Shown here one piece after another: positions 8,623-33,352 of a stretch of 64,000 nucleotides of DNA (within the stretch, counting starts at the first letter, position 1; the number at the start of each line of letters is the position of its first letter). Both the position numbers and the translations under genes were made by a program. Under the pieces are notes generated by a model that was given only the letters and a program-made list of their open reading frames with translations, was not told where the DNA came from and did not search any database. The stretch is taken from positions 186,001-250,000 of IMG/VR virus record IMGVR_UViG_3300017917_003143, one strand, 5' to 3'.

Positions 8623-9582
8623 ATGAGCAAAACTACTAAGATTCGTTGGGTTATCGCCCATGAGCCTTTGAACCTTTTCATCCGTGCCGCTGAAGACTTT
8701 GAGCGTCGTGTAAACGAGCAACAGAGCGAGCACAAGATCGAAGTTGAAATCATGACTCTCACAGAGTACAGCCAGCGTTACAACGATGGCGTGGTTGTGA
8801 CCAAGCATGACCTACTAGATCTCATGGAAGCAGGCAAGATCGAAATGAGCCAGATGTACACAACATGGCTCGCTGAGAAGTATGAACAAGACTTCTTGGT
8901 GTTCGACCTTCCTTTCTTGTTCAAGGATCACGAGCATGCAACCCGTGTGCTAGAAGGTGAAGTTGGTGAGACTCTTCTCAACAAACTCACAAACAAGTCA
9001 AATGTACGTGGCTTGAGTTTCACATACTCAGGCGGTTTCCGTCAGATGATTTCCAACAAGCAGGTCAGCACACTAGAAGAACTTGCTGGCACACCAGTGC
9101 GTTCAAACCGTAACCCTGTTGCACAAGCAACTATTTCTGCATTGGGCATGAAGCCTGTTGTTGCCGAAGTAGAAGATCTGCGCAAGGTCGTGGTCGAAGG
9201 TGAAGCTGAAGGTGGCGAAACCAACTACCCACGTATGTACCCACTACGTCAGAATGAAGTTACCAAGTCAGTGATTGACACAGGCCACAGCTTGTTCCTC
9301 ACATCAATGATCATTGGTGACAAGTTCTGGGATAGCCTTAGCCCCGAAGTACAGGCTGTGATCAAGCAAGCCGCTATTCTTGCAGGTCGCGAAGAGCGTG
9401 CCGAAACCATCCGTGATGGTGCTCGTGCCGAGCGTCGCCTTGTTGAAGAAGAAGGTGCCAATATCGTTAAGTGGACACAAGAGCAACGTGATGCCGCCAA
9501 GGCCGCGCTGTCAGGTGTTTACGATCAGTTCCGTGACACATTCACACCTGGTCTCATCGAAGCGATTGAGAAGAAGGCTTAA
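8623..9582 (+). CDS. dctP: TRAP transporter substrate-binding protein (DctP family)
   Basis: FDLPFLFKDHEHA; KFWDSLSPEVQAVI motifs. Confidence 0.9.
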   Translation: MSKTTKIRWVIAHEPLNLFIRAAEDFERRVNEQQSEHKIEVEIMTLTEYSQRYNDGVVVTKHDLLDLMEAGKIEMSQMYTTWLAEKYEQDFLVFDLPFLFKDHEHATRVLEGEVGETLLNKLTNKSNVRGLSFTYSGGFRQMISNKQVSTLEELAGTPVRSNRNPVAQATISALGMKPVVAEVEDLRKVVVEGEAEGGETNYPRMYPLRQNEVTKSVIDTGHSLFLTSMIIGDKFWDSLSPEVQAVIKQAAILAGREERAETIRDGARAERRLVEEEGANIVKWTQEQRDAAKAALSGVYDQFRDTFTPGLIEAIEKKA

Positions 9583-17942: not shown

Positions 17943-17944
17943 GG

Positions 17945-18405: not shown

Positions 18406-18408
18406 AAT

Positions 18409-18483: not shown

Positions 18484-18488
18484 AAAAT

Positions 18489-18562: not shown

Positions 18563-18564
18563 GA

Positions 18565-18800: not shown

Positions 18801-18820
18801 TTTTATAAAGGAAAAATAGC

Positions 18821-19048: not shown

Positions 19049-19079
19049 ATTTTTGCCAAAAGAGATATATACACATATT

Positions 19080-19678: not shown

Positions 19679-19806
19679 TATTTGGGATTTACCCTGGTGG
19701 CAATTGGGTTGGGGATTAGCAGTGGTGGCCAACTATGTGTATTGGTGCATCATCTACTCCCAAATCTTTGATTGACCTAAAATACCATTTCTAGTATAAT
19801 ACTAGC

Positions 19807-20163
19807 ATGGATTTTTACATAGACGAAGCGTATCTCACTGATGTCACGATACGGACTGAATATCCTCGCTACGATAATCGAACGGATCTTACCCCAGAAG
19901 AACTACTGGACATAATCAAGAATCCTACAGCGATGACTTCGATATCTAACAAAGATCATCCTGAATTTACCTATCTGCGAGAGCAGTTAGAACAACAAGG
20001 CTTCATAAAAGTCGAGCGTGGTTGGTGGAATGGAGATCGTGTATTAAAAACATTTCAATTAAATGATGTTGAGTTTAAAAAGCACAGTCAGTTTCCATGT
20101 GCCTCGGCTATGAAGCATCATTTAAAGTTTGCAAAACTATATAAACAAAAGAAAGGAGCATAA
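19807..20163 (+). CDS. hypothetical protein
   Basis: ORF after promoter TTGACC-17-TATAAT (19772-19800). Confidence 0.75.
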   Translation: MDFYIDEAYLTDVTIRTEYPRYDNRTDLTPEELLDIIKNPTAMTSISNKDHPEFTYLREQLEQQGFIKVERGWWNGDRVLKTFQLNDVEFKKHSQFPCASAMKHHLKFAKLYKQKKGA

Positions 20164-20164
20164 G

Positions 20165-20752
20165 ATGCCTAGTGTATTTTTAGTCAGCGACACGCACTTT
20201 GGTCACGCAGGTGTCTGTCGCTTCACACGTAACGATGGTGTTACAAAACTTCGACCTTGGACAGATCCCGACGAAATGGACGAAGCCATGGTCCGGGCCT
20301 GGAACGAAAGAGTCCGGCCCACAGACAAGGTTTACCACTTGGGAGACGTCGTGATCAACCGCAAGGCGTTAAAAACTCTTGCTCGCTTGAATGGAGACAA
20401 AGTTTTGATCCGCGGTAACCATGACATCTTCCCAGATGTGGAATATCGAGAATACTTCCGTGAACTACGTGCTTATCATGTTATGAACGGAATGATATTG
20501 AGTCATATTCCTATCCATCCAGAAAGCCTGGGTCGCTTTGGAGTAAACATTCACGGTCACTTGCATGCCAATCGTGTAATGGTGCCATTGGCAACCAGTG
20601 GAGTTCTTGATCGGATTGACACAAGATATCACTGTGTGTGCGTGGAACAGACTCCAGACTTTGCACCTATCCTGTTTGAAGATGTTATCAAACGCATCGA
20701 AGCAGAAGGTGGTGTAGTAGGTTTTCAAAATGGCAATGGTCCCACAATGTAA
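20165..20752 (+). CDS. calcineurin-like metallophosphoesterase
   Basis: SDTHFGH, HLGD, GNHD, HGHLH. Confidence 0.93.
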   Translation: MPSVFLVSDTHFGHAGVCRFTRNDGVTKLRPWTDPDEMDEAMVRAWNERVRPTDKVYHLGDVVINRKALKTLARLNGDKVLIRGNHDIFPDVEYREYFRELRAYHVMNGMILSHIPIHPESLGRFGVNIHGHLHANRVMVPLATSGVLDRIDTRYHCVCVEQTPDFAPILFEDVIKRIEAEGGVVGFQNGNGPTM

Positions 20753-20762
20753 GGAGAGTATT

Positions 20763-20912
20763 ATGCCGATGTACGAAGCAACTGTAAGAACGCCCGAAGG
20801 CGAAAAGAAAGATCGTGTGTATGCCAAGGATTTACAAGAAGCACGACAACTGTTGGAACAGCGGCATGGTCCTAGGAATGTTCCTTATCAGCCACATATA
20901 ATTCCCAGTTAG
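20763..20912 (+). CDS. small hypothetical protein
   Basis: AAGGAG SD; MPMYEATVRTP... Confidence 0.7.
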   Translation: MPMYEATVRTPEGEKKDRVYAKDLQEARQLLEQRHGPRNVPYQPHIIPS

Positions 20913-21045
20913 GTGTCGATCAGCCTCGCTCACTTGGCCGACGTCAATAAGTGCCGATAGCGAAATGATCGGGTGACGATTACCGCGAGGTAACAAGAGC
21001 CGCAGAAACCAAATGTCTGCGCCGGACTGGGTAACCGGCATACAT
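20913..21045 (+). ncRNA. five-hairpin intergenic RNA candidate
   Basis: CACTT/AAGTG, CCGAT/ATCGG, TTACC-GCGA-GGTAA, GCAGA/TCTGC, GCCGG/CCGGC. Confidence 0.5.
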
Positions 21046-21050
21046 ACTCC

Positions 21051-22226
21051 ATGTCAAAAATATTCAGCCTAGAACCTGCCATCGATCCCAATGCAAGACC
21101 CACGTTCTTGTTGGATTGGGAGTTGACACTGAAGTGTAACTTGGACTGTAGCTACTGTCCTACTCCCCGACAAGTTCCTTTGTCTTTGGCCTATCATGAC
21201 AACACAGCCGATCATCCGCCCTTGGATGAGTGTTTGAAAACCATAGATTTCATGTACGAATATGTAGATGCTTACATGGAATACAAACCTCGCTGGACTC
21301 GTGCTGTGGTATTAAATGTCTACGGTGGCGAAAGTTTGTTCCATCCAGACATAGTCGAAATTTTGAAGCAAGTAAGGATACGGCACGAGAGATATAAAGA
21401 TCGTTGGCCTCTCACTGTCACTTGCACTACCAATGGAGTAGTAGGCCAGAATCGAATGTCTGAGATAGTGGATCTCATAGACGAGTTTACAGTGAGTTAT
21501 CACGCTGAGTCGTTGGAAAAACAAAAATCGCAGGTAAGAGAAAATCTGTTGTTGATAAAAAATCACAATCGACGACTGAAATGTGTGATCTTGATGCATG
21601 GCAATCAAAAACACTGGCCTGATCTGTTAGAACTCATTGATTTCTGCAAGCAACACGATATCAACTGCTTGCCAAGACAGCTGGATGGGCCAATCAACAG
21701 CAATTATAATCCGGAGCAAATAGTTTGGTTCAAAGATTTTTGGAAACAAAAGAATCCACCCAAGAGCCAGAAAAAACAGTCTCAACTTCTGTCCGATAAA
21801 ACAACAGCACTGGAATCTACCAATGTCAAATTGACCAATGTTGGTCGTGCTTGTTGCGGTGGACGTTTGATGTGTACCAACTCGGAATTAAAAAATCCGA
21901 TCTTTTATGTGCCAGACAATGTGTTCACCGGGTGGCATTGCAGTGTGAATTGGTTCTTTCTTTATGTCAAACAGCACACACGAGAAATATTCACCAACAA
22001 AGATTGCAGGATGAGATTTGATGGCACTGTGGGTCCAATTGGCGATCTCGATCATGCACAGGATCTAATCAACCAAACAAAAAACCTACTCCACAACCGA
22101 TCCATGCCAGTGATCACCTGTGCCAAAGACCATTGCTGGTGCGGACTGTGCTCTCCAAAAGCAGAAACCAAACAAGATTTTTTAAAAATCATGGACAAAC
22201 ACATCACTGAAAAAGTATTACGGTAA
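21051..22226 (+). CDS. radical SAM protein with Cys-rich C-terminus
   Basis: CNLDCSYC; YGGE; C-terminal CxxxxCWCGLC. Confidence 0.9.
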   Translation: MSKIFSLEPAIDPNARPTFLLDWELTLKCNLDCSYCPTPRQVPLSLAYHDNTADHPPLDECLKTIDFMYEYVDAYMEYKPRWTRAVVLNVYGGESLFHPDIVEILKQVRIRHERYKDRWPLTVTCTTNGVVGQNRMSEIVDLIDEFTVSYHAESLEKQKSQVRENLLLIKNHNRRLKCVILMHGNQKHWPDLLELIDFCKQHDINCLPRQLDGPINSNYNPEQIVWFKDFWKQKNPPKSQKKQSQLLSDKTTALESTNVKLTNVGRACCGGRLMCTNSELKNPIFYVPDNVFTGWHCSVNWFFLYVKQHTREIFTNKDCRMRFDGTVGPIGDLDHAQDLINQTKNLLHNRSMPVITCAKDHCWCGLCSPKAETKQDFLKIMDKHITEKVLR

Positions 22227-22288
22227 TCTTGATTGTTGCATTATCAACTACGATAATGTATAATTACTAACTTAGAGCGAGGATAAAA

Positions 22289-22486
22289 ATGTCAAAAAAA
22301 CTCAACCGTAAGAAACCAGGATACACCAAAAGTGGCGAAATCAAGATCGTTAGCTTGAACTCGAAACAATTGACTGAGCTGATGGAAAAAACACAGCAAA
22401 AGAAAAAACGTGCCAAGATACAACGTAGGATTTGGCAACTGACTGGTCAACCAATGGTCGCAGTCTCTGACATATCCGCAGAGTAA
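22289..22486 (+). CDS. small basic protein
   Basis: GAGGA SD; ORF track. Confidence 0.7.
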   Translation: MSKKLNRKKPGYTKSGEIKIVSLNSKQLTELMEKTQQKKKRAKIQRRIWQLTGQPMVAVSDISAE

Positions 22487-22492
22487 AATCAC

Positions 22493-22566
22493 GCCCTGTT
22501 AGTTAAATGGTATAACAGTTGATTTGTAATCATCAATTGGCAGTTCGATTCTGTCACGGGGCACCA
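22493..22566 (+). tRNA. tRNA-Thr (TGT), second copy outside the array
   Basis: TTTGTAA loop; CCA. Confidence 0.9.
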
Positions 22567-22752: not shown

Positions 22753-22789
22753 CATGGGGCATGTGTTGTTAAATACCACATGCTTCATG
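22753..22789 (+). promoter_or_regulatory. start-codon-occluding hairpin with TAAATA in its loop
   Basis: CATGGGGCATGTG/CACATGCTTCATG; TAAATA 22770-75; ATG 22780. Confidence 0.6.
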
Positions 22790-23352
22790 TAGAAACTGCA
22801 CAAACACTAGGGCCAGGTCTCTGGTACCTAAACAAAGTTTTCGATGACCGTACCTATCGGGAGATACGTCGATGTTATCGAGAGACTGCCACAGGTTGGC
22901 AATGTCTCTATCCTAACAGGCTAATGAGCCTGCCAAACAATCCAGACTACGATTATCTACAAGAAGTAGCCCTGGACATCAACCTCGCTGTCAGCGAACT
23001 CACCGGACTGCAACTACGTCCACTCAATCAAGAAATATTCATTGACCTACCAGGCCATCAGCTTACATGGCACTTTGACAACAACAACTACAAGGTTCTT
23101 CTGCAAGTGTACTGCGGAGATATACCTCAAGCCAACATGGGTACACAATGGTACGTAGGTGATAAAAACCCTAGTTTATTCTCTCGGTACGGAGTTAATT
23201 CTATTGTAGATGTGCAAGGGTTAGACATCGTAGAAACTGCGTATGCCCCTAATGCCGGCTATGTCAATGACAATACTATTAAAAAAGCCCACGGAACACG
23301 GCGGATAGCACCAGGGCTCAGCAGAGAAAGTGTGCTTTTTACTTTCGGATAA
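22780..23352 (+). CDS. 2OG-Fe(II) oxygenase-like protein
   Basis: WHFD...KAHG (HxD...H). Confidence 0.65.
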   Translation: MLHVETAQTLGPGLWYLNKVFDDRTYREIRRCYRETATGWQCLYPNRLMSLPNNPDYDYLQEVALDINLAVSELTGLQLRPLNQEIFIDLPGHQLTWHFDNNNYKVLLQVYCGDIPQANMGTQWYVGDKNPSLFSRYGVNSIVDVQGLDIVETAYAPNAGYVNDNTIKKAHGTRRIAPGLSRESVLFTFG

Positions 23353-23432
23353 AAAAAGTTTCGCAGATATTGTGATGCAATAAGTAATCCGTTACAATAA
23401 ACTCTTGTAACTTCTTTCGAAAGGAAAAATGA

Positions 23433-24620
23433 ATGTTTAAAAAAATTGTTATCGCAGGTGCAATCGCAGCCGTGGCTGCCGGTACTGCCCTAGCACAAAG
23501 TACGCCTACTGCCAGTAGCAATCTTGGCGGGGGAGTTCAAGTTTATGGTATCATGGACATGGGCGTGATGAGCGCCAACAAAGTAGGAGCAGCCAATGGC
23601 AGTCTCACTACAACTGTTTGTGGTATCGACCAGACATGCCGTCTGGGTTTTCTAGCATCTGAAGACCTCGGTGGTGGTTTAAAAGCTGGTGCTAAATTGG
23701 AAAGCCAGATCGACGGATCCAGTGCCAACGGTAGTTCAGGATCACAAGGTCTTGGTTCTGCTTCTGGTTCTGCCAATGCTGTGTTTAGCCGTGGTGCCAA
23801 CGTATTCCTTGATCATTCTAAATATGGTCGTTTGACCATGGGTCGTCAGGACAATGCGGCTTGGTCTACATATTCGTCATTGGATGGTCGTAGAAACTCA
23901 AACTTTGGTTCTATCACCAACTTCATCGCTGACGGTTCTAGCTTTGGTGGTACTAGTACAGCCAAAACAGGTCTAGCCAACTACACTGGTTCACCATTTA
24001 CCAGCAACACAATTCGTTATGACACGCCATCATTCTACGGTTTTAACGCCACATACGCTCGTGTGTTTGGCAACACCGCAGGCGATGCCGACAAGAGCTC
24101 TGCAGATCAATATGTTCTGCGCTATGACAACAACGGTATGTTCTATGGTGCTGTTGGTTCATACAAAGTCAACAACTCGTCAGGCAATGCCGCAGGTGAA
24201 AACCTCTTTGCCGGTGTTGGTGCTCGTGTAACCAAGGACTTGACATTGACTACTAGCTATTTCAATCTCAAGAACCCTAGCAACGTATCTGGCACCAACG
24301 GAGATTATGATCTCTACAGCCTAGGTGCTCGTTATCGAGTCAATCCCAAAGTTGATGTTACCGCAGGTCTCTATCAACTCAAAGACAACAATAACTCAGC
24401 CAACGGAGCAAGCCTCCAGTCAGCACAAGTTACATACTCGTTTAGCCGTCGTACACAGGTATATCTAGCAGGCTCGTTTGTGCAAAACAAAGGTGCCACA
24501 GGTATCGCAGCCTATGGTGGTGGTGGTGCTAACTTGAACTCTCTAGGGACAAGCAACTACTTGGCAGCCGCTGGGGTAGATCAATCAGCTTATGCAGTTG
24601 GTCTACGTCACTCGTTCTAA
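23433..24620 (+). CDS. Gram-negative (betaproteobacterial-type) porin
   Basis: Signal peptide; VQVYGIMD; RLGFLASEDLGGGLKA; C-terminal VGLRHSF. Confidence 0.93.
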   Translation: MFKKIVIAGAIAAVAAGTALAQSTPTASSNLGGGVQVYGIMDMGVMSANKVGAANGSLTTTVCGIDQTCRLGFLASEDLGGGLKAGAKLESQIDGSSANGSSGSQGLGSASGSANAVFSRGANVFLDHSKYGRLTMGRQDNAAWSTYSSLDGRRNSNFGSITNFIADGSSFGGTSTAKTGLANYTGSPFTSNTIRYDTPSFYGFNATYARVFGNTAGDADKSSADQYVLRYDNNGMFYGAVGSYKVNNSSGNAAGENLFAGVGARVTKDLTLTTSYFNLKNPSNVSGTNGDYDLYSLGARYRVNPKVDVTAGLYQLKDNNNSANGASLQSAQVTYSFSRRTQVYLAGSFVQNKGATGIAAYGGGGANLNSLGTSNYLAAAGVDQSAYAVGLRHSF

Positions 24621-24637
24621 ATCAAGAACGTACAATC

Positions 24638-24670
24638 AAAAACACACAGGAAACCCCTGTGTGTTTTTTT
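24638..24670 (+). terminator. intrinsic terminator
   Basis: AAAAACACACAGG-AAACC-CCTGTGTGTTTTTTT. Confidence 0.85.
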
Positions 24671-24676
24671 TGACTT

Positions 24677-26014
24677 ATGTTTGAAATATTTTTTTACGCT
24701 CTACTTGGAAGTTTGTCCGGGGTCATCACAGGATTGATACCTGGCATAGGACCAGCACAGTTATTGGCTATTGCCTACATGGCCTTGCTGGCCTTGGATC
24801 CTATACAGCTGGCCGTGTTTTATATAGGATTGATAACCACTAGTCAGTATCTAGATTCAGTGCCTGCTACATATTTTGGTGTTCCTGGCGAGGTCAGCGC
24901 GATTCCTGCTAGTTACGAAGGTCCTCGACTGATGGCACAAGGATTAGGACATCAAAGCATAAGAATGACTGCTATTGGAAGGATCATGGCCAGTGGTATC
25001 GCTGTAGTGTTGGGTGCGATGTTGCTGAGTGTAATCTTACAAAGCACCTGGATATTTAAAAACAATGTGCAGTTGGTACTATTGCTGATGGCAGTGGTAG
25101 GAGTGGCTGTGACCAGCCAGTGCAATTGGTGGCGTACTATTGTAGCTATGTCTCTGGGTTACCTTATCGGAAAAGTAGGATTCGATTATACCACAAATAC
25201 AGACATACTCACTTTTAATATACCCCACTTGCAAGAAGGTCTCCCTTTGTTGTCTGTGCTTATGGGGTTGTATGTTATACCGTTACTGTTGGTTGAACTA
25301 GCTAAGACCGTAAACCTTCACACTGATCCTGCGCCACAAACTACAAATGCGTTATCTGTAAAACCCTATGTGCCTACTATGATACGGAGTGGGGTCATGG
25401 GTTGGTTTTTAGGATTGGTTCCGGGACTGAGTTATATTCTAAGTGCCACTGGCTGTTATGCCTATGAAAAATGGCGACGCATACGAGCCAATCTCTACAA
25501 GCCTGGCGATATGCACAGCATGGTAGCGGCTGAGACTGGAAATACCAGCGGAGCTTTCAGTACCTTGATTCCACTGATGATTTTTGGTATACCTATCACC
25601 ATATCCGAAGTGATCCTGTACAATCTCATGTTGACCACAGGAGCAGACTTCAGTCGCGGCGGTTTTTTACTGAGCAACTATCACTGGTTACTAGGCAGCT
25701 TCTTGTTGGCCAATGTGCTAGGGTTAATTTTTTGCTGGCCGTTGGCTGTGCGAATGGCGCACTGGGTTACTAAAATAAATCTCCGCGTGACCTGGATCAC
25801 AATAATTACTGTGGTATCTCTATGTGTGCTATGGCAAGGATATTACAATCAAACGATCTTGCTATACAGTACAGTATTTGCTATAATGATAGTGATAGGC
25901 CTGGTATGCATGAGATATCGAGTAGATTTACTGCCGGTGTTGTTTATATACTTGCTACAGAACAACGTCGATCAGGCAGTGTTCAATCTGTGGCAGATTT
26001 ATTTTAAAGGATAA
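24677..26014 (+). CDS. tctA: tripartite tricarboxylate transporter large subunit (TctA family)
   Basis: Polytopic; GLIPGIG; GVPGE; AAETGNTS; LMIFGIP. Confidence 0.88.
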   Translation: MFEIFFYALLGSLSGVITGLIPGIGPAQLLAIAYMALLALDPIQLAVFYIGLITTSQYLDSVPATYFGVPGEVSAIPASYEGPRLMAQGLGHQSIRMTAIGRIMASGIAVVLGAMLLSVILQSTWIFKNNVQLVLLLMAVVGVAVTSQCNWWRTIVAMSLGYLIGKVGFDYTTNTDILTFNIPHLQEGLPLLSVLMGLYVIPLLLVELAKTVNLHTDPAPQTTNALSVKPYVPTMIRSGVMGWFLGLVPGLSYILSATGCYAYEKWRRIRANLYKPGDMHSMVAAETGNTSGAFSTLIPLMIFGIPITISEVILYNLMLTTGADFSRGGFLLSNYHWLLGSFLLANVLGLIFCWPLAVRMAHWVTKINLRVTWITIITVVSLCVLWQGYYNQTILLYSTVFAIMIVIGLVCMRYRVDLLPVLFIYLLQNNVDQAVFNLWQIYFKG

Positions 26015-26017
26015 AAA

Positions 26018-26914
26018 ATGTTTCGACTTTCAACTTTCGTACTGGCTATGTGTCTAGTTATGGGTGTGCAAGCCAAGGAACGACAAATCAGTGTGATTTA
26101 TAGCAGTCCTGCAGGTGGTATCATTGACGGTACCAACAAGGCCATGCAAGAACAATTGGAAAAAAATAACTGGCGTGTGGACGCTGTACGAGCTCCAAAC
26201 TGCAGAGCCGCCAAAGCATGGCTAGACAACAATCCTGGCAAGCCAGCGGTGATGAGTTTCCAAGTCGAAGAAGATGCATACACTCGAATGGCACCGGGTG
26301 CAGCCGATGCTTGTGGCATGACTATAGAACCTAAAAACGTAGCCGCAATCAGCATAGCCAACCACTATGTGGTATGTAGTATGTTGCCCCCTGAAAAGGC
26401 CTTGCCTAAATTCTTAGCCGGTGGTAACAAGATCGGCGTCACATATTTTGCCAGCACCAATGTAGTAGTAGCAGAAAATTTGGTCAAAACACTGAATCTC
26501 AAAGACACTAAAGTTTTAAGATTCCAAGGCCAACCGAAAAACACGCAAGCCTTGGTCAGTGGAGATGTTGACTTTACCATTGGCACCAATGCGGCTAGTA
26601 TCACCAGTGCTGGTGGTCAGTGTTTCTTGAGCACAGCGGCCAAACCCGTGGCAGAAAAAATGGGTTGGAAAAGTATAACTGATCTAGATCCTAAGAATCC
26701 TTGGATAGGCTCTGGTCAGATGTATGTGTATCTGGCATTCAACACAGACCCTGATACTATAGCCAAAGAAACAATAGAAGTGGTCAAAACTAATCCGATC
26801 CTGATAGAATACAATAAGACTAACTCGTACCCAACAGGTATCGCTGCCGGTCAGACCAAAGATCAGCAATGGAAAACCATCCAGAATCATATCAATCGTT
26901 ATCTTGCTAAATGA
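26018..26914 (+). CDS. TctC/Bug-like periplasmic binding protein (divergent)
   Basis: Signal peptide; YSSPAGG; ALVSGDVDF; follows tctA. Confidence 0.65.
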   Translation: MFRLSTFVLAMCLVMGVQAKERQISVIYSSPAGGIIDGTNKAMQEQLEKNNWRVDAVRAPNCRAAKAWLDNNPGKPAVMSFQVEEDAYTRMAPGAADACGMTIEPKNVAAISIANHYVVCSMLPPEKALPKFLAGGNKIGVTYFASTNVVVAENLVKTLNLKDTKVLRFQGQPKNTQALVSGDVDFTIGTNAASITSAGGQCFLSTAAKPVAEKMGWKSITDLDPKNPWIGSGQMYVYLAFNTDPDTIAKETIEVVKTNPILIEYNKTNSYPTGIAAGQTKDQQWKTIQNHINRYLAK

Positions 26915-28140
26915 TGGAATATCCTAAATTTATCCCCGACGGAAAATTTAATCGGTTTGGATTTTTTCAAGTTGGGGATGATTGTTTTTACAGCAAACTG
27001 GATGCTGTCAGACACAGTGTTACCACTGGAGAACAAGTTGAGTGGAATTTTAATGACTCAATACTGTCTTCTTGCGACTGGCTAGTCGAACCAACTCACA
27101 CTATAGAAGAGTTATACAAGCAACGTGCCCAGCAAATCAGAGACAAGTATGATTATGTTGTAGTAATGTTTAGCGGAGGTTGCGACAGCACTGCTGTACT
27201 AGATTCCTTTGTTGATAACAACATCCAACTCGACGAAGTAATGATTTGGCACTGGCTCGACGGCAACGGTGGTAATCTTCATGCTTTCATGACTGATGAA
27301 ATTTTTCATTTAGCTATCCCACATGCGTTAAAAAAGTTACAAGGTCTTGGTACGCGAGTGACTTTGCATGACAACAGCGACTGGGAAAGAGAACGTATGC
27401 AGGATCCTGAAACTAGGAACCAGTGCTGGAGAGGAATCAACAACATACACAATCTAGCCTTGCAAGGACGTTATTTCAGTCCAACACAAGGTATCCATCA
27501 GAGATTCCGACATATAAAAAAACTAATCGATCAGGGAAAATCTGTTTGCTTTATATGGGCTGAGGCCAAGCCCAAGATTTCATTCGATCGAGAACTTAAC
27601 AAACATTACTACTGGATCGAGGATCACTATGCGTGTTTGCCTCAACCCATGCAACAATGGAAAAACGATCCAACAGAAAATCACGAGCATTTTTTCACAC
27701 AAGATGAGTTGCCTGAATTGATGATAAAACAGGCTCATATATTATTAAATTGTGTAAAAGAATGGAATCAAGATAACTTTGTCGAGTATGTACACGAAAA
27801 AAGAGCCATCATGGGTCCGCACGGATTCATGGTCGGTGATCCCAGAGGTTCGTGGGGTCGAACTGTTCGGGATGAAAAAGATTGGCAGATAGAATATGAT
27901 GTGTATCATAAACTGATCTATCCTGGACATCAGCCCGGCGGCTATGTACAATGGAAACAAGTGGGTCGTGCAGTGCATCCTGCTCACCAATGGCTCGCTA
28001 ACGAATTTCCATTGCAAGCTAAACATTGGTATCGTGACTACATCAACACCTTTTCCAAATTGCCCGATTCGTGGACTCATTATCGTGGTACTCTTGAGCA
28101 GAATCTCAAACGATTAGATAAAAAATACTACATAGAATAA
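26911..28140 (+). CDS. PP-loop protein, paralogue of 6399..7583
   Basis: ELYKQRAQQIRDKYDY..MFSGGCDS. Confidence 0.75.
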   Translation: MMEYPKFIPDGKFNRFGFFQVGDDCFYSKLDAVRHSVTTGEQVEWNFNDSILSSCDWLVEPTHTIEELYKQRAQQIRDKYDYVVVMFSGGCDSTAVLDSFVDNNIQLDEVMIWHWLDGNGGNLHAFMTDEIFHLAIPHALKKLQGLGTRVTLHDNSDWERERMQDPETRNQCWRGINNIHNLALQGRYFSPTQGIHQRFRHIKKLIDQGKSVCFIWAEAKPKISFDRELNKHYYWIEDHYACLPQPMQQWKNDPTENHEHFFTQDELPELMIKQAHILLNCVKEWNQDNFVEYVHEKRAIMGPHGFMVGDPRGSWGRTVRDEKDWQIEYDVYHKLIYPGHQPGGYVQWKQVGRAVHPAHQWLANEFPLQAKHWYRDYINTFSKLPDSWTHYRGTLEQNLKRLDKKYYIE

Positions 28141-28142
28141 TC

Positions 28143-28730
28143 ATGTTTTTTTATCTGCCTGTATCTTTACCGTTGCCACCTAAGAATCTCATCTCTGAGA
28201 TAATGAATCCTGATTTTGATCTAGTACAAGATCCTGCACAAAAACAAAGATTTCAGACCAGTGGAGGCAAATATCTTGAAAGATCATTGACCTACCAAGA
28301 AAAAATTTATCAAACTCGTGTACAGTATCGATATCTACTGACTGACAAATTAAATCAATGGATAGATGATAATTTACCATCCAATTATCTTGCGGCTAGT
28401 TTGGCTGTAAGCAAAGGAAGCAGTCCTGTGCATGGACCACACATTGATTACAATAGACACTATATTTTATATCTGTCTTTAGACAATGGTGGAAACAATG
28501 TGTTGACTTCATTCTGGAGGAAATCAGGATGCCCCATAGAGTTTGAATCTCCAGAATGGCCAGGTATAGCGCAAGATTATCCTGATCTAGAACATCTAAA
28601 ATCTGTAGTGTTACGACCCAATCAATGGTATTTGCTCAATGGCTGGATTTATCACAGTGTAGAGAATGTTGAATCAGATCGTGTTAGTTTGCAAATTGAC
28701 TACAATGAAATAAATTTATGTCCAAATTAA
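28143..28730 (+). CDS. cupin / 2OG-Fe(II)-like protein
   Basis: HGPHID...NQWYLLN..IYHSVEN; paralogue of 29335. Confidence 0.6.
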   Translation: MFFYLPVSLPLPPKNLISEIMNPDFDLVQDPAQKQRFQTSGGKYLERSLTYQEKIYQTRVQYRYLLTDKLNQWIDDNLPSNYLAASLAVSKGSSPVHGPHIDYNRHYILYLSLDNGGNNVLTSFWRKSGCPIEFESPEWPGIAQDYPDLEHLKSVVLRPNQWYLLNGWIYHSVENVESDRVSLQIDYNEINLCPN

Positions 28731-29326
28731 AAGTAGCCATCACAGGTACTACGCAAGGACTCGGTCAGTACCTTAAACAAGTGTTTGAACAACACGAACA
28801 TAGTGTATTAGAGTTCAATCGTAGCAACGGGTATGATATTAAACATCCTCAGCGTATTGTCGACCAAGCACAAGACTGTGATTTGTTTATCAACAACGCC
28901 TATGATGGATATGGGCAAGTGGATCTTCTTTATGCCTTGGTAGACCGTTGGGAAAAACAAAGCAATAAGTTTATCATAAACGTTGGCAGTGAACAAACAC
29001 GTCGCTGGAGCAATCATCACGGTGATACCATAGTTCCATTTGATTGGCGCGAAGGTCAAAGATCAATACAGTATCGTAGTCATAAACTAAGTTTGTCAGA
29101 AGCTAGTAACTATCTTTATCAAGTCATGACATGGCCACAAATCATGTTAGTCGACATCGGTATGCTAGATACTCAACCTGCTGGATATTGGAGTAAACAT
29201 CGCACATCCAGACAACCAATCCGTTGCGAAGATGCGGCACGCCTTATCTATGATTTGTTTGATCGTAGAAATCTACATTTTGTTAGCGAAGTGGTACTGA
29301 GACCACTGGTCTGGATGGAAGAATAA
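28718..29326 (+). CDS. short-chain dehydrogenase/reductase
   Basis: AITGTTQGLG; FINNA; YRSHK (YxxxK). Confidence 0.85.
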   Translation: MSKLKVAITGTTQGLGQYLKQVFEQHEHSVLEFNRSNGYDIKHPQRIVDQAQDCDLFINNAYDGYGQVDLLYALVDRWEKQSNKFIINVGSEQTRRWSNHHGDTIVPFDWREGQRSIQYRSHKLSLSEASNYLYQVMTWPQIMLVDIGMLDTQPAGYWSKHRTSRQPIRCEDAARLIYDLFDRRNLHFVSEVVLRPLVWMEE

Positions 29327-29334
29327 GTAAGAAT

Positions 29335-29925
29335 ATGACTATTACCTGTTTACCATTGCCGTTTCTTTCGTCCCCTCCAGAGCAGTATGTTGAACAATCT
29401 CTGGAATACAAAACACAAGAGTTATCCAACGCATTCGGTTCTCCGAGTTTTTATAGTTCTCGTATGGTAGCCAAGGACGGGGTCTTGTATCAAACACGGA
29501 GTCAAAAACGAATACCATTAGAAGGCGATTTTACCGAATGGTGTCATGAAAATATTGATCCAAAATGTTATCATTGTAGCATTTGTGTCGCTGATGGCCC
29601 AGGGCCATATCATGGCCCACATGTTGATCCTTACAGAGATTACGGACTTTTATATGTTACAGATACCGGAGGGTCATCTGTTACTACATCTTTTTGGCAG
29701 AAAAAAAATTCACCAATGATTTATCCAAGAGATACTGAGCAGTTTGTATCAGAAGATTATAGCGACGAACTGATACTTATTGATCGGTTTGTATTACAAC
29801 CCAATCAGTGGTACCTACTTAATACAAGAATTATTCACAGTGTTGAAAATGCAACATCTCGCCGCATTAGTCTACAATGTAGCCTTGATGATGTTGCAGA
29901 TTTACTACAAAAAAACAAAGGTTGA
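29335..29925 (+). CDS. cupin / 2OG-Fe(II)-like protein
   Basis: HGPHVD...NQWYLLN..IIHSVEN. Confidence 0.6.
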   Translation: MTITCLPLPFLSSPPEQYVEQSLEYKTQELSNAFGSPSFYSSRMVAKDGVLYQTRSQKRIPLEGDFTEWCHENIDPKCYHCSICVADGPGPYHGPHVDPYRDYGLLYVTDTGGSSVTTSFWQKKNSPMIYPRDTEQFVSEDYSDELILIDRFVLQPNQWYLLNTRIIHSVENATSRRISLQCSLDDVADLLQKNKG

Positions 29926-29950
29926 CCAGAAATCTCCATTTTGCTATAAT
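29922..29950 (+). promoter_or_regulatory. sigma70-type early promoter
   Basis: TTGACC-17-TATAAT; similar promoters at 30237-65 and 32016-44. Confidence 0.85.
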
Positions 29951-30297: not shown

Positions 30298-31392
30298 ATG
30301 TCATTTGAACATCGCACCGTAACCGCGGTTGGTGCCCGCAAATCCATCAAAAAATGCTTTGCCAAGAAGCGTCCTCTATTCCTGTGGGGTCCTCCTGGTA
30401 TTGGTAAAAGTGAAGTGGTAGCAGACATTACCCGTGAGCTCGGCGGTCTTATGATTGACTTGCGCCTGGGCCAGATGGACCCTACCGACATCCGTGGTAT
30501 TCCTTTCTATAACAAAGAAAAGAATGTCATGGACTGGGCACCCCCTATCGATCTGCCCGATGCAGAAACTGCCGCTCAGTATCCTGTTGTGGTGCTGTTC
30601 CTAGACGAGATGAACTCTGCGGCTCCGGCTGTGCAGAGTGCGGCTTACCAGCTGGTACTGAATCGTCGTGTAGGCAAGTATATCCTGCCCGACAATGTTG
30701 TCATGGTTGCCGCAGGTAACCGTGAAAGCGACAAAGGCGTTACTTACCGTATGCCTACTCCGCTGGCAAACCGTTTCGTCCACCTAGAGATGCGAGTTGA
30801 CTTCCCTGTGTGGCAAGAGTGGGCTGTGAATGCTGGCATCCACAAAGACGTGGTTGGTTACCTCAGCTTCGCCAAGCAAGATCTCTACGACTTCGACGCT
30901 AAATCTGCAAGTCGTTCGTTCGCTACTCCACGCTCTTGGACCTTTGTGAGTGAACTGCTCGCAGACGAGGACATGGACGAGACCACTTACACTGATCTTA
31001 TCGCAGGTGCTGTGGGCGAAGGCCTTGCTGTGAAGTTCATGGCGCATCGCAAGATCGCAGGCAAGATGCCCAAGCCCGAAGACATCCTGTCAGGCAAGGA
31101 AAAAGATCTCAAGATCAAAGAAGTCAGTGCCATGTACAGTTTGGTGATCTCTATGTGCTACGAGCTCAAAGGTGCTATCGAGCGCAAGGTTGCAGACAAA
31201 GACTTCCATGCTATGTCGGACAATTTCTTCCGTTATATGATGGACAATTTTGAAACTGAGCTGGTGGTCATGGGTGCTCGTATCGCGCTCACTACTTACA
31301 ACCTGCCGTTCCAGCCTACCAAGCTCAAGAACTTTGACGAGTTCCATCAGCGTTACGGCAAGTACATTCTGAGCGCAAGCCAGAATAGTTGA
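30298..31392 (+). CDS. MoxR-like AAA+ ATPase
   Basis: GPPGIGKS; LFLDEMN; PLANRF. Confidence 0.92.
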   Translation: MSFEHRTVTAVGARKSIKKCFAKKRPLFLWGPPGIGKSEVVADITRELGGLMIDLRLGQMDPTDIRGIPFYNKEKNVMDWAPPIDLPDAETAAQYPVVVLFLDEMNSAAPAVQSAAYQLVLNRRVGKYILPDNVVMVAAGNRESDKGVTYRMPTPLANRFVHLEMRVDFPVWQEWAVNAGIHKDVVGYLSFAKQDLYDFDAKSASRSFATPRSWTFVSELLADEDMDETTYTDLIAGAVGEGLAVKFMAHRKIAGKMPKPEDILSGKEKDLKIKEVSAMYSLVISMCYELKGAIERKVADKDFHAMSDNFFRYMMDNFETELVVMGARIALTTYNLPFQPTKLKNFDEFHQRYGKYILSASQNS

Positions 31393-31436
31393 TAGGTCAC
31401 GGGTTGGGTCCACTATCGGAAACGAGACATAGGGCT

Positions 31437-31676
31437 ATGTCGGATCCAACCCACCTTTCTTACCAACCACCCGTGAGGGTGGTTTTCGCTCCGTACGATC
31501 ACGATGACGTGCAGACCATGCTACGAAAGGTCGTGCAGGACTTTGGTCGTCCCGGAAATCGATGGCGTTATCGTAGCCCAGATATTGGTCAAGCAGAAAA
31601 CAATGTTTGGATGCTGGACTTTTACTTTGCCGATCCGCATGATGCAATCATATTTGGTCTTAAATATCAAAGATGA
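31437..31676 (+). CDS. hypothetical protein
   Basis: ORF track; start reassigned to MSDPT. Confidence 0.6.
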   Translation: MSDPTHLSYQPPVRVVFAPYDHDDVQTMLRKVVQDFGRPGNRWRYRSPDIGQAENNVWMLDFYFADPHDAIIFGLKYQR

Positions 31677-32026
31677 GATATAAAATAGTCAAACTCGACG
31701 GTCGCTGGAGTTACAGGAAATACTTTGAGTATGCTGTGATTTTTTCTAATCGCATGAGCAATTGGAATGGACCCATGCACTTTGCCACCGCTCAAAAATA
31801 CTTTTTTGACACCTATGGCTGGAGTGCCGAGATCCGACAGTGGGCAGACATACGTGAGTATTATCAAAATGTCTGGAACTATGTCAAGCCTAATCCGCCT
31901 GGCATCATGCCTGAGTGTGTGAATTCCTACTGGGCCTGGACTAACGGCTACGAGGATCTGCGTATCTATGTAAAAAGCCAGCAAGAACTTACACTTTTCC
32001 AGCTGAAATATCCGGTTGACCAATAA
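31673..32026 (+). CDS. hypothetical protein
   Basis: ATGA overlap; ORF track. Confidence 0.7.
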   Translation: MRYKIVKLDGRWSYRKYFEYAVIFSNRMSNWNGPMHFATAQKYFFDTYGWSAEIRQWADIREYYQNVWNYVKPNPPGIMPECVNSYWAWTNGYEDLRIYVKSQQELTLFQLKYPVDQ

Positions 32027-32068
32027 TGCCATTTCATGTATAATATAAGATATAGTTAAGGAGCAACC

Positions 32069-33352
32069 ATGTCTACAAAAACCGCAACATCTACACAAAA
32101 CAAAGACGACGCTAAAAAGTTTGCCAACCTTATTGGCCCAATGGATCCTAAGTTGGACAAAATCGTGCGTGAAAAGCTCGTGACTGCCCGTGTGGGTTTG
32201 TTGCTCCGTGCTAGTTTCTTTGGAAATCTTGCTACTCGTTTGAAGCTGGTCAATGCTGACGAGTGGTGTTCCACAGCCGCAACAGACGGCCGTCACTTCT
32301 ATTACAATACTCGTTTCATCGAGATGCTCAAACCCAAAGAGATCGAGTTTCTCTTTGGTCATGAGGTGCTCCATTGTGTGTACGATCATTTTGGTCGCCG
32401 TGGTGATCGCGACCCTCAGCTGTTCAACGTGGCCAATGACTTTGCTGTCAACGCAGACTTGAAGAAGCATCGTGTGGGCGAGTTTATCACTTCAGTACCT
32501 TGCCTGTATGACTCTAAGTTTGAAGGCAAATCGTCTGAGGAGATCTATGATTATTTGTACGAGAATGCTGAAAAAATCAGTCTAAGTGATCTCATTGACA
32601 AGCTCTTGGATGATCACTTGGATGGCGAAGGCGACGGAGAAAGCGATGGCAAAGACGGTGACCAACCAGGCAAAGGTCGCCCCAAGCTCAGTGCCGAAGA
32701 ACGCCAAAAGATCAAAGATGAGATCAAAGAAGCCATGTTGGCGGCCGCCCAAGCATCCGATGCAGGTAGCATTCCAGCAGGTGTCAAACGCATGATCCAG
32801 GATCTCACTGATCCCAAGATGAACTGGCGTGAACTGCTCCGCATGCAGTTAGAGAGCACTATCAAGAGTGACTATACTTGGATGCGCCCGAGCCGTAGAG
32901 GCTGGGATATGGATGCTGTGTTGCCCGGTATGAATCGTACCGATGCTATCGACATCGCTATCTACATTGACATGTCAGGTTCTATCAGTGAAGCTCAAGG
33001 CAAAGACTTCCTCAGCGAAGTCAAAGGTATCATGGAGAGCTTTGAATCCTACAAGATCCATGTCGCTTGCTTTGATACTGAAGTGTACAATCCGCAACAA
33101 TACAACTCAGAAAATCTTGACAGCATTGAAGAATATGAGTTGGCTGGTGGCGGTGGCACTGACTTTGATTGTATCTTCAAGCATTTGAAAGATGAACAGA
33201 TCGAGCCCAAGCGATTGGTTGTGTTCACTGACGGTTACCCATGTGGTAGCTGGGGTGATCCCAACTATTGCGATACTGTCTGGATCATCCACGGTGACAA
33301 GAATCCCAATCCACCGTTTGGTACCTTTGCATTGTACGAGGAAGACAAATGA
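32069..33352 (+). CDS. metallopeptidase-like plus VWA domain protein (MoxR partner)
   Basis: HEVLH zincin motif; IDMSGS MIDAS; GGGGTDF. Confidence 0.9.
   Translation: MSTKTATSTQNKDDAKKFANLIGPMDPKLDKIVREKLVTARVGLLLRASFFGNLATRLKLVNADEWCSTAATDGRHFYYNTRFIEMLKPKEIEFLFGHEVLHCVYDHFGRRGDRDPQLFNVANDFAVNADLKKHRVGEFITSVPCLYDSKFEGKSSEEIYDYLYENAEKISLSDLIDKLLDDHLDGEGDGESDGKDGDQPGKGRPKLSAEERQKIKDEIKEAMLAAAQASDAGSIPAGVKRMIQDLTDPKMNWRELLRMQLESTIKSDYTWMRPSRRGWDMDAVLPGMNRTDAIDIAIYIDMSGSISEAQGKDFLSEVKGIMESFESYKIHVACFDTEVYNPQQYNSENLDSIEEYELAGGGGTDFDCIFKHLKDEQIEPKRLVVFTDGYPCGSWGDPNYCDTVWIIHGDKNPNPPFGTFALYEEDK

What the first reader, a model, noticed from the sequence alone, without database searches (positions are those of the whole stretch)
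22780..29925. Import-and-modify module: porin, TctA, TctC-like, PP-loop protein, SDR and three HxD...H oxygenases
Seen: a contiguous plus-strand block covering outer-membrane entry, periplasmic binding, inner-membrane transport and cytoplasmic enzymes. There is no TctB. The pairing of a PP-loop protein with a TctC-like binding protein recurs at 6399-8479. Inference: a repeated functional unit that imports a carboxylate (for example 2-oxoglutarate or citrate, the co-substrate route for 2OG oxygenases) or modifies a small molecule or RNA.
Basis: partly seen in the sequence, partly recalled or inferred. Interest (0 to 1): 0.6.

Follow-up and report, generated by a model that had tools for sequence, protein, structure and literature searches.

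The report
Phage carboxylate-uptake genes with novel PP-loop enzyme
A 344-kb uncultured T4-like pond phage carries its own porin, transporter subunit and periplasmic binding proteins, each binding-protein gene sitting next to a gene of a large, virus-only, uncharacterised PP-loop (asparagine-synthetase-like) enzyme family; the same pairing recurs across many aquatic phages, so it looks like a new kind of phage nutrient-capture cassette.

Summary
Eight tightly packed plus-strand genes fill 22780-29925: a 2OG-oxygenase-like protein, a Porin_4 porin, TctA, a diverged TctC-family binding protein, a PP-loop protein, a 2OG oxygenase, an SDR-like protein and a second 2OG oxygenase. The genome has no TctB. 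A paralogous PP-loop gene abuts a true TctC gene and an orphan DctP gene at 6378-9582.

The window lies in a near-complete 343.6-kb T4-like jumbo phage from a pond metagenome.

The PP-loop protein belongs to a very large family seen almost only in viral sequence: 1,878 clusters at 50% identity, no Pfam or NCBIfam model, and no homologue in 50,697 GenBank phage records. Its best structural match is the synthetase domain of asparagine synthetase B and beta-lactam synthetase. It has no glutaminase domain and no conserved cysteine.

In 68 non-redundant viral loci, 35 of 92 family genes have a TctC or DctP gene as immediate neighbour, against 8.9 ± 2.6 after shuffling gene order.

My best reading is a phage "capture, import and ATP-dependent amidation" cassette for a carboxylate (confidence about 0.4). 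The substrate is unknown. These genes also lie next to phage tRNA arrays, so a regional effect or a tRNA-directed role is not excluded.

The parts
22780..23352 (+). 190-aa putative 2OG/Fe(II) oxygenase (first gene of the block)
   Evidence: ORF. No Pfam hit. It shows an H-F-D ... H ... R-E-S pattern in the sequence. The nearest named ESM Atlas clusters are viral 2OG-FeII_Oxy_3 (score 0.94). It is syntenic in L001-L004. It was not folded.
23433..24620 (+). 395-aa outer-membrane porin with signal peptide
   Evidence: Pfam Porin_4, 6e-37. It is the only Porin_4 in the genome. It is at most 33% identical to porins in 61 Burkholderiales genomes.
24638..24668 (+). terminator-like hairpin (13-bp stem plus T run) between porin and TctA
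   Evidence: Consensus scan only. It may act as an attenuator that lets the porin be made in excess. Function not tested.
24677..26014 (+). 445-aa TctA-family inner-membrane permease, with no TctB partner
   Evidence: Pfam TctA, 1.6e-58, full profile length. It is the only TctA in the genome. About 12 hydrophobic segments. Only 20-27% identical to the best TctA in 301 Pseudomonadota genomes.
26018..26914 (+). 298-aa secreted, diverged TctC-family solute-binding protein
   Evidence: Signal peptide, P-A-G-G-I-I-D motif and four conserved Cys. hhalign against a phage TctC profile gives 97.5%, E 5.9e-12 over 182 columns. An iterated HMM converges on the TctC set. No Pfam hit. In that alignment the position of TctC's second glycine-rich motif does not carry it.
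26911..28140 (+). 409-aa PP-loop ATP pyrophosphatase of a virus-only family; asparagine-synthetase-B-like synthetase fold
   Evidence: Its start overlaps the stop of the binding-protein gene by 4 bp. AF2 mean pLDDT 91.3. VIA-align: AsnB Z 10.6, beta-lactam synthetase 9.2, TsnB9 9.2, CarA 7.6, TilS 7.4. Invariant S88, G90, D92. No Pfam or NCBIfam model.
28143..28730 (+). 195-aa 2OG/Fe(II) oxygenase
   Evidence: Invariant H100, D102, H171, R180 in 14 homologues. AF2 mean pLDDT 88. Foldseek hits FIH, NO66, AlkB homologues and prolyl hydroxylases.
28718..29326 (+). 202-aa short-chain dehydrogenase/reductase-like protein
   Evidence: Conserved T-G-x-x-x-G-x-G, N-N-A-Y and Y-x-x-x-K motifs. The top PDB profile hits are SDRs, but at E 0.01-0.1. 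No Pfam hit at 0.01.
29335..29925 (+). 196-aa 2OG/Fe(II) oxygenase, paralogue of 28143-28730
   Evidence: 39% identity, E 1e-34. Same invariant residues. A promoter-like site at 29922-29950 follows it.
6378..7583 (+). second PP-loop family gene (TTG at 6378; ATG at 6399 is the likelier start)
   Evidence: 35% identity to 26911-28140, E 2e-39. It falls in the other deep clade of the family tree.
7580..8479 (+). 299-aa TctC solute-binding protein with signal peptide; its start overlaps the PP-loop gene's stop by 4 bp
   Evidence: Pfam TctC, 2.5e-18. The pair plus DctP is conserved in L069 and L073-L076.
8623..9582 (+). 319-aa orphan TRAP solute-binding protein (DctP)
   Evidence: Pfam DctP, 1.6e-46. 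NCBIfam TRAP_S1, 3e-36. No DctM in the genome.

Best explanation
This is an auxiliary 'capture, import and trap' cassette of a jumbo T4-like phage.

Proposed mechanism:
- During infection the phage adds its own porin to the outer membrane and its own TctC- and DctP-type binding proteins to the periplasm.
- It also adds a TctA permease to the inner membrane. This permease would work alone or with host TctB, and the orphan binding proteins would dock on host TTT or TRAP membrane units.
- Together these raise uptake of one or a few organic carboxylates.
- In the cytoplasm the neighbouring PP-loop enzyme adenylates the carboxyl group with ATP and passes it to ammonia or an amine. This is the amide-forming chemistry of the asparagine synthetase B / beta-lactam synthetase synthetase domain, here without a glutaminase domain.
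- In this phage two 2OG oxygenases and an SDR then modify the product.

Shown: the gene identities, the fold, and the recurrent linkage. Inferred: the direction of transport, the carboxylate substrate, and the amidation chemistry.
For: Gene identities.

Phage origin: a virus record, 99% complete by CheckV, with a T4 Gp23 capsid gene at 3e-100.

Linkage:
- The whole block is syntenic at 60% PP-loop identity, and the core (porin, TctA, TctC-like, PP-loop) at 43%.
- Of 91 non-redundant family genes, 38 have a TctC or DctP gene within 300 bp. Another 22 abut a further family paralogue.
- Shuffling gene order inside 68 loci gives 8.9 ± 2.6 against 35 observed.
- The adjacency state changes at least 23 times on the family tree and occurs in both orders.
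- In loci anchored on TctC instead, 23 of 40 carry a family gene.
- L053/L054 hold the same gene set (oxygenase, porin, oxygenase, TctC, PP-loop, SDR) in another order at 23-37% identity.
- L039 has TctA directly upstream of the PP-loop gene.
- In a clade without binding proteins, the PP-loop gene is flanked by a Porin_2 or small OMP gene and a DUF2061 membrane-protein gene.

Secretion: 48 of 51 phage TctC-like proteins have signal peptides.

Chemistry:
- The best structural matches are carboxylate-adenylating amide synthetases.
- There is no conserved Cys, which argues against the sulfur-transfer, Fe-S and Zn classes of PP-loop enzyme.
- The family is mildly acidic, median pI 6.35.
- From established knowledge: TctC and DctP proteins bind carboxylates, and bacterial TctC (Bug) genes often sit beside the enzyme that uses the imported compound.
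Against: - No ligand or substrate is identified.
- Fold similarity is moderate (Z about 10, 9% identity) and does not fix the chemistry.
- The binding protein is periplasmic and the enzyme cytoplasmic, so linkage is the only tie between them.
- The family also lies next to tRNA arrays: 54 of 79 loci carry tRNAs, and 16 of 88 family genes are within 300 bp of one. These genes therefore share a plastic genome region, which inflates co-location. The within-locus shuffle controls for most of this.
- 29 of 91 family genes have none of the labelled partner genes within 300 bp.
- The oxygenase and SDR genes are absent from L003/L004.
- TctB is missing, and the TctA, porin and binding protein are very diverged from cellular ones.
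- Co-divergence of partners could not be resolved at depth.
Confidence: 0.4

Rival explanations
1. Regional hitch-hiking with a tRNA-directed enzyme. The PP-loop protein would modify phage tRNAs, for example a TilS-like amidation of an anticodon base. It would sit beside binding-protein genes only because both live in the plastic tRNA region of these T4-like phages.
For: - 54 of 79 family loci contain tRNA genes (387 in all), almost all on the same strand. 16 of 88 family genes lie within 300 bp of a tRNA gene.
- In the window both PP-loop genes flank the 33-tRNA array.
- TilS appears among the fold matches (Z 7.4 and 5.8) and as the only, non-significant, PDB sequence hit.
- tRNA(CAU) is the commonest tRNA in these loci.
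- The upstream Redoxin/AhpC synteny is shared between loci with different partner genes.
Against: - Immediate adjacency to binding-protein genes is about four times the within-locus shuffle, roughly 10 sd above it.
- Start and stop codons often overlap, and the pair occurs in both orders.
- Two or three tandem paralogues per phage are hard to explain for a single tRNA target.
- The family is mildly acidic.
- The asparagine-synthetase-type matches cover 277-291 residues, against 174 for TilS.
- No recognisable tRNA-binding domain or Pfam ATP_bind_3 hit.
Confidence: 0.2
2. Biosynthesis and export rather than import. An asparagine-synthetase-like synthetase, 2OG oxygenases and an SDR would together build a small amide or lactam, on the enzymatic logic of clavam and carbapenem pathways (beta-lactam synthetase or CarA, then a 2OG oxygenase, then a dehydrogenase). 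The envelope proteins would handle the precursor or the product.
For: - Beta-lactam synthetase (Z 9.2) and carbapenam synthetase (Z 7.6) are among the best fold matches.
- The synthetase, oxygenase and SDR genes co-occur here, in L001/L002 and, reordered, in L053/L054.
- The parallel with clavam and carbapenem pathways is from established knowledge, not a test made here.
Against: - Most family loci lack the oxygenase and SDR genes.
- No gene was found for making a beta-amino-acid precursor.
- TctC and DctP systems are known as uptake systems.
- The oxygenase's nearest folds are protein and nucleic-acid hydroxylases rather than clavaminate synthase.
Confidence: 0.1
3. Protein or peptide modification. 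The PP-loop enzyme would act like the asparagine-synthetase-like lasso-peptide cyclases, and the FIH-like oxygenases would modify the neighbouring secreted proteins or a small peptide before export.
For: - The oxygenase's top fold matches are protein hydroxylases (FIH, NO66, prolyl hydroxylases).
- In other phages the family gene is followed by a twitch/SPASM radical SAM gene, a class that includes peptide maturases.
- The neighbouring genes are nearly all for secreted proteins.
Against: - No precursor-peptide gene or leader peptidase was seen.
- Sec substrates are exported unfolded.
- The partners (TctC, DctP, porins) are unrelated folds with no shared motif.
- No binding test was run, because gene adjacency alone does not justify one.
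Confidence: 0.08

Closest known systems
Tripartite tricarboxylate transporter (TctABC / Bug family) of Pseudomonadota
   Same: There is a TctA-family permease over the full profile length. There are TctC-family periplasmic binding proteins with signal peptides and the P-G-G-x-x-D loop. As is common for bacterial Bug genes, a binding-protein gene sits next to an enzyme gene.
   Different: It is encoded by a phage. There is no TctB anywhere in the genome. The TctA is only 20-27% identical to cellular TctA and is 445 aa, against matched open frames in the sampled bacterial genomes mostly around 500 aa or more. The binding protein next to TctA is too diverged for Pfam and lacks the second glycine-rich motif.
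Asparagine synthetase B / beta-lactam synthetase / carbapenam synthetase / TsnB9 (Asn_synthase synthetase domain, PP-loop)
   Same: It has the S-G-G-x-D-S PP-loop. These are the best structural matches over about 280-290 residues (Z 9.2-10.6). The chemistry they imply is ATP adenylation of a carboxylate followed by amide formation.
   Different: It has only a ~60-residue N-terminal element in place of the Ntn glutaminase domain and no N-terminal Cys. Sequence identity is 8-12%. No member reaches the Asn_synthase Pfam model. The family is a distinct one found almost only in viral sequence, about 380-410 aa long.
Cyanophage PstS and other phage-encoded solute-binding proteins (auxiliary metabolic genes)
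   Same: A lytic phage supplies a periplasmic binding protein that presumably plugs into host membrane transport units to raise uptake during infection. This parallel is from established knowledge.
   Different: These are carboxylate-type (TTT and TRAP) rather than ABC phosphate binding proteins. They come with a porin, a permease subunit and a dedicated cytoplasmic enzyme. There are often several diversified pairs per phage.
TilS (tRNA-Ile lysidine synthetase) and other tRNA-modifying PP-loop enzymes
   Same: They share the PP-loop core fold (Z 7.4) and a genomic position beside phage tRNA arrays.
   Different: There is no ATP_bind_3 Pfam match and no recognisable tRNA-binding C-terminal domain. 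The family is mildly acidic, has several paralogues per phage, and is more strongly linked to binding-protein genes than to tRNA genes.

Membership tests
Tripartite tricarboxylate transporter (TTT) | TctA large permease subunit | tested here: met
   Pfam PF01970, 1.6e-58, profile positions 2-422 of 423. It is the single copy in the genome.
Tripartite tricarboxylate transporter (TTT) | TctB small membrane subunit | tested here: not met
   PF07331 finds nothing in the 343.6-kb genome at E <= 1. There is no small ORF between the porin, TctA and binding-protein genes. TctB is poorly conserved, so a very diverged form cannot be excluded.
Tripartite tricarboxylate transporter (TTT) | TctC periplasmic binding protein | tested here: met
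   7580-8479: Pfam TctC, 2.5e-18. 26018-26914: no Pfam hit, but profile-profile probability 97.5%, E 5.9e-12, plus a signal peptide and the P-x-G-G-x-x-D motif.
PP-loop ATP pyrophosphatase superfamily | S-G-G-x-D-S pyrophosphate loop in a Rossmann-like alpha/beta fold | tested here: met
   S88, G90 and D92 are invariant; G89 and S93 are at least 90% conserved in 50 members. The model has mean pLDDT 91. Foldseek and VIA matches are all PP-loop enzymes.
Asparagine synthetase B family (class II amidotransferase, Pfam Asn_synthase) | N-terminal Ntn glutaminase domain with Cys at position 1-2 | tested here: not met
   The protein is 409 aa and begins M-M-E-Y-P-K. Only about 60 residues precede the PP-loop domain.
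Asparagine synthetase B family (class II amidotransferase, Pfam Asn_synthase) | Sequence match to the Asn_synthase synthetase domain model | tested here: not met
   No member of the 50-sequence alignment hits PF00733 at E <= 0.1. The similarity is structural only (Z 10.6, 291 residues, 9% identity).
TilS (tRNA-Ile lysidine synthetase) | ATP_bind_3 PP-loop domain plus C-terminal tRNA-binding domain(s) | tested here: not met
   PF01171 is hit by 3 of 50 members, at E >= 0.03 only. The TilS structures align over the N-terminal domain only: 174 residues, chain residues 0-212.
QueC / sulfur-transfer PP-loop enzymes (ThiI, MnmA, TtcA/TtuA, LarE) | Conserved Cys residues (Zn site, Fe-S cluster or catalytic Cys) | tested here: not met
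   No alignment column has Cys in more than 28 of 50 members.
2OG/Fe(II)-dependent oxygenases | H-x-D...H iron triad, a basic residue binding the 2OG C5 carboxylate, and a double-stranded beta-helix fold | tested here: met
   For 28143-28730 and 29335-29925: H100, D102, H171 and R180 are invariant; the model has mean pLDDT 88 and matches FIH, AlkBH, P4H and EFE. For 22780-23352 there is only the motif and language-model neighbours. No Pfam hit for any of the three.
Short-chain dehydrogenases/reductases | T-G-x-x-x-G-x-G cofactor motif, N-N-A-G-like motif, Y-x-x-x-K catalytic pair | tested here: inconclusive
   All three motifs are present and conserved in three homologues. Profile hits to solved SDRs reach only E 0.011-0.1, and Pfam adh_short is not hit. 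It was not folded.
TRAP transporter | DctP binding protein together with DctQ/DctM membrane subunits | tested here: not met
   DctP is present (1.6e-46). No DctM is found in the genome at E <= 0.1. DctQ was not searched.

The most novel reading that the evidence does not exclude
A very large family of asparagine-synthetase-like PP-loop enzymes, found almost only in viral sequence and so far unnamed, works as the cytoplasmic half of modular phage 'binding protein plus enzyme' cassettes. With these cassettes, large aquatic T4-like phages would re-plumb the host envelope (porin, TTT/TRAP binding proteins, TctA) to scavenge and chemically trap specific carboxylates. This would be a new class of auxiliary metabolic module. 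It may also hold enzyme chemistry of its own, for example amide or lactam formation followed by 2OG-dependent oxidation.
Probability: 0.3. Interest if true: 0.8.

Novelty: new variant of a known kind. Interest (0 to 1): 0.62.

Why it matters
Phage-encoded binding proteins such as cyanophage PstS are a well-known example of viruses steering host nutrient uptake. Here a phage brings parts for every envelope layer of a carboxylate route, plus a dedicated enzyme from a family with at least 1,000 diverged clusters that no database names.

If the pairing is functional, three things follow:
- It assigns a first working role to a large 'dark' viral protein family.
- It identifies organic-acid uptake as a target of viral reprogramming in freshwater bacteria.
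- It offers matched binding-protein and enzyme pairs whose ligands can be found by simple screens.

It also gives a natural case of TctA without TctB.

Tried and rejected
- DNA and protein searches of 50,697 GenBank phage records: no DNA match to the block and no tblastn match to the PP-loop protein. The TctC protein gave one weak hit.
- Pfam, PHROGs and NCBIfam name none of the PP-loop, diverged binding-protein, oxygenase or SDR proteins. The weak PHROG hits to PAPS reductase reflect only the PP-loop. The phrog_274 label 'endonuclease V' for the oxygenases does not fit their fold.
- A PDB sequence profile search for the PP-loop family gave only a non-significant TilS hit. For the diverged binding protein it gave nothing meaningful.
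- Looking for the family in 185,579 species genomes gave 4 contigs, all in freshwater MAGs and all with phage-like neighbours. I read these as mis-binned phage, not as bacterial members.
- Host inference from the porin and TctA failed. Both are only 20-33% identical to the best bacterial hits sampled, including a Polynucleobacter MAG.
- A Mantel test of PP-loop against TctC divergence gave r 0.26, driven by close pairs and saturated at depth. It is inconclusive for co-evolution.
- A search for domain fusions found none. The best 150 of 1,878 representative clusters are all single-domain, 272-453 aa.
- The radical SAM at 21051-22226 is not detectably related by BLAST to the radical SAM that follows PP-loop genes in other phages. 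A QueC/QueE-type deazaguanine pathway is rejected: no Zn-Cys site and no QueC-level similarity.
- Four literature searches found no description of phage TctC/DctP with a PP-loop enzyme. A fifth, on Polynucleobacter, phage and porin, returned one unrelated paper. The huge-phage envelope preprint 10.64898/2026.10.24.761521 does not mention porin, TctC or PP-loop.
- Sequencing runs: only the source pond metagenome holds the stretch, and no RNA run does. I therefore did not lay reads.
- I did not run complex prediction, because I do not claim that the proteins bind each other.

Full report
**What the window is**

The 64-kb window is bases 186001-250000 of a single 343,632-bp contig. The contig is held as a virus record that CheckV rates 99% complete. 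It encodes a T4-type major capsid protein (Pfam Gp23, 3e-100). The window carries 33 tRNA genes and a tmRNA between 2959 and 22566. The only public run that holds the stretch is a pond metagenome, probably its source. So the finding lies in an uncultured jumbo T4-like phage, not in a bacterium.

**Checking the observation**

- Pfam confirms the porin (Porin_4, 6e-37) and TctA (1.6e-58, full profile length).
- The other six genes have no Pfam hit at E 0.01, and five of them have none of any weight even at E 10.
- The 298-aa protein has a signal peptide, a P-A-G-G-I-I-D loop and four conserved cysteines. A profile of it and two orthologues matches a profile of 17 phage TctC proteins at hhalign probability 97.5%, E 5.9e-12. 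An iterated HMM started from it converges on the TctC set. It is therefore a diverged TctC-family binding protein. In that alignment it lacks the second glycine-rich motif of the family.
- TctB is not detectable anywhere in the genome.
- The genome has one TctA, one Porin_4 and no DctM.

**The PP-loop protein**

The protein at 26911-28140 carries S-G-G-C-D-S. With an alignment of 50 homologues it folds at mean pLDDT 91.3.

- Foldseek finds only the ~160-residue PP-loop core in LarE, NAD and GMP synthetases, carbapenam synthetase and asparagine synthetase.
- An exhaustive structural comparison ranks asparagine synthetase B first (Z 10.6, 291 residues). Next come human ASNS (9.7), beta-lactam synthetase (9.2), the hydroxyamidotransferase TsnB9 (9.2), carbapenam synthetase (7.6) and TilS (7.4).
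- The protein has no glutaminase domain.
- The family has no conserved cysteine and is mildly acidic. This argues against the sulfur-transfer, Fe-S and Zn classes of PP-loop enzyme and mildly against a tRNA-binding enzyme.
- It fits the amide-forming class, which adenylates a carboxyl or carbonyl group.

**The oxygenases and the SDR**

- The 195- and 196-aa proteins are paralogues.
- In 14 homologues H100, D102, H171 and R180 are invariant. This is the H-x-D...H...R-x-S signature.
- The model (mean pLDDT 88) matches FIH, NO66, AlkB homologues, prolyl hydroxylases and the ethylene-forming enzyme.
- The 190-aa first gene shows the same motif pattern. Its nearest named clusters are viral 2OG-FeII_Oxy_3, but by language-model features only.
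- The 202-aa protein keeps the three classical SDR motifs, but its profile hits are weak.

**The second pair**

- 6378-7583 (probable ATG at 6399) is 35% identical to the PP-loop protein.
- Its stop overlaps the start of a bona fide TctC gene.
- An orphan DctP gene follows.
- The two binding proteins are not detectably similar by BLAST.
- The two PP-loop genes fall in the two deepest clades of the family tree.

**How large and how viral the family is**

- A word-index search gave 116 homologues, all unnamed.
- A full profile search of 1.84 billion representatives gave 1,878 clusters at E <= 1e-3 and 1,000 at <= 1e-30. The best 150 are all single-domain and 272-453 aa.
- No member hits a Pfam family convincingly.
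- GenBank phages have none.
- BFVD and the ESM Atlas return only 'uncharacterized' proteins of uncultured phages at TM 0.64-0.84.
- Among one genome for each of 185,579 species, only four freshwater MAG contigs carry it, with the same phage-like neighbours.

**Linkage**

In close and middle-distance relatives:
- In a relative at 60% identity the whole eight-gene block is syntenic.
- At 43% identity the first gene, porin, TctA, TctC-like and PP-loop genes are kept. The two oxygenases and the SDR are absent there.

In distant relatives:
- At 28% identity, in a 261-kb phage, the PP-loop gene is again followed by a secreted TctC-like gene.

In 79 further viral loci:
- 38 of 91 non-redundant family genes have a TctC or DctP gene within 300 bp. 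These occur in either order, often with overlapping stop and start codons.
- 22 more abut another family paralogue.
- Shuffling gene order within 68 non-redundant loci gives 8.9 ± 2.6 adjacent pairs (maximum 18 in 2,000 shuffles) against 35 observed.
- The adjacency state changes at least 23 times on the family tree.
- Starting from TctC instead, 23 of 40 viral TctC loci carry a family gene, usually abutting.

Variant arrangements:
- L053/L054 hold oxygenase, porin, oxygenase, TctC, PP-loop and SDR in a different order at 23-37% identity to the window's proteins.
- L039 has TctA directly upstream of the PP-loop gene.
- In a clade with no binding protein, the gene is preceded by a Porin_2 or small beta-barrel gene. 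It is followed by a DUF2061 membrane-protein gene and a twitch radical SAM gene.

The family's steady company is therefore envelope and transport proteins.

**A confound**

- 54 of the 79 loci also carry tRNA genes (387 in total). 16 of 88 family genes are within 300 bp of one.
- In the window both pairs flank the tRNA array.
- These cassettes therefore live in the plastic tRNA region of T4-like genomes. Some of the co-location is regional.
- The within-locus shuffle removes most of that effect. It cannot exclude a tRNA-directed function.
- Co-divergence of the partners could not be resolved at depth.

**Interpretation**

I rate the model in Best explanation, a capture, import and ATP-dependent amidation cassette for a carboxylate, at about 0.4. 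The 2OG oxygenases and the SDR are accessory tailoring steps in this lineage. A terminator-like hairpin after the porin gene and a promoter-like site just past 29925 fit one expression unit, but they are consensus matches only.

Rivals are a tRNA-modifying enzyme that merely shares the region (0.2), a small biosynthetic pathway on clavam/carbapenem logic (0.1), and modification of the secreted proteins or a peptide (0.08).

**Comparison with known systems**

- This is not a complete TTT system, because TctB is missing.
- The enzyme is not a member of the asparagine synthetase B family. It has no glutaminase domain and no Asn_synthase model match. Its fold is nevertheless most like that family's synthetase domain.
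- The nearest biological precedent is phage-encoded binding proteins such as cyanophage PstS. The differences are the carboxylate-type binding proteins, the extra porin and permease, and the obligate-looking partnership with an enzyme family found almost only in viral sequence.
- I found no description of this in the searchable literature.
- I file it as a new variant of a known kind.

**Limits**

- No binding, activity or expression data exist.
- Only 80 of at least 463 viral loci were examined.
- The host is unknown. The porin and TctA are only 20-33% identical to sampled bacterial homologues.
- The first oxygenase-like gene and the SDR were not folded.
- I did not use read laying, complex prediction or any alternative genetic code.

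Noticed in passing
window 2959-22566: There are 33 tRNA genes plus a tmRNA (17303-17716, tag ANDEVYALAA), nearly all in one plus-strand array. They include three tRNA(CAU) genes and, at 2959-3033, a tRNA with anticodon CUA that ARAGORN labels tRNA-Pyl (it would read the amber stop codon). ORFs read normally under code 11.
   Followed up: partly
window 46743-54251 (- strand): This is a tandem array of five diverged paralogues (20-30% identity) of an N-terminal-twitch/SPASM radical SAM family (NCBIfam N_Twi_rSAM). The same family sits immediately downstream of PP-loop genes in other phages (L060, L062, L067, L077, L078).
   Followed up: partly
L010-L088 (viral loci): PP-loop family genes lie in or next to phage tRNA arrays in 54 of 79 loci. 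Many phages carry two or three tandem family paralogues, for example L013, L047 and L068.
   Followed up: yes
window 5214-6358: An AhpC/TSA peroxiredoxin gene and a carboxymuconolactone-decarboxylase (AhpD-like) gene sit directly upstream of the second PP-loop gene. A Redoxin gene holds the same relative position in distant phages (L046, L060, L078).
   Followed up: partly
window 30298-33352: A MoxR-like AAA ATPase gene and a DUF2201 metallopeptidase/VWA gene follow the block. They are syntenic in L001 and L003.
   Followed up: no
window 18897-22226: Between the tRNAs lie a malonyl-CoA-decarboxylase-like fragment (205 aa), a metallophosphoesterase and a 391-aa radical SAM protein. The metallophosphoesterase/radical SAM pair is kept upstream of the block in L003/L004, where a release-factor-like (RF-1 domain) gene also lies nearby.
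   Followed up: no
window 35453-45597: This stretch holds a ThyX thymidylate synthase, an NAD-dependent sugar epimerase/dehydratase, a DegT-type aminotransferase and a carbamoyltransferase. Together they suggest a phage-encoded sugar-modification capacity.
   Followed up: no
window 60741-63977 (- strand): A 1,078-aa protein whose only Pfam hit is a CBM_5_12 carbohydrate-binding module.
   Followed up: no
L046, L060, L062, L077, L078: Phages of another lineage encode a Porin_2-type porin or a small OMP beta-barrel next to the PP-loop gene. The same loci also carry AdoMet decarboxylase and capsule-synthesis-like genes. This suggests a different host group with the same cassette logic.
   Followed up: partly
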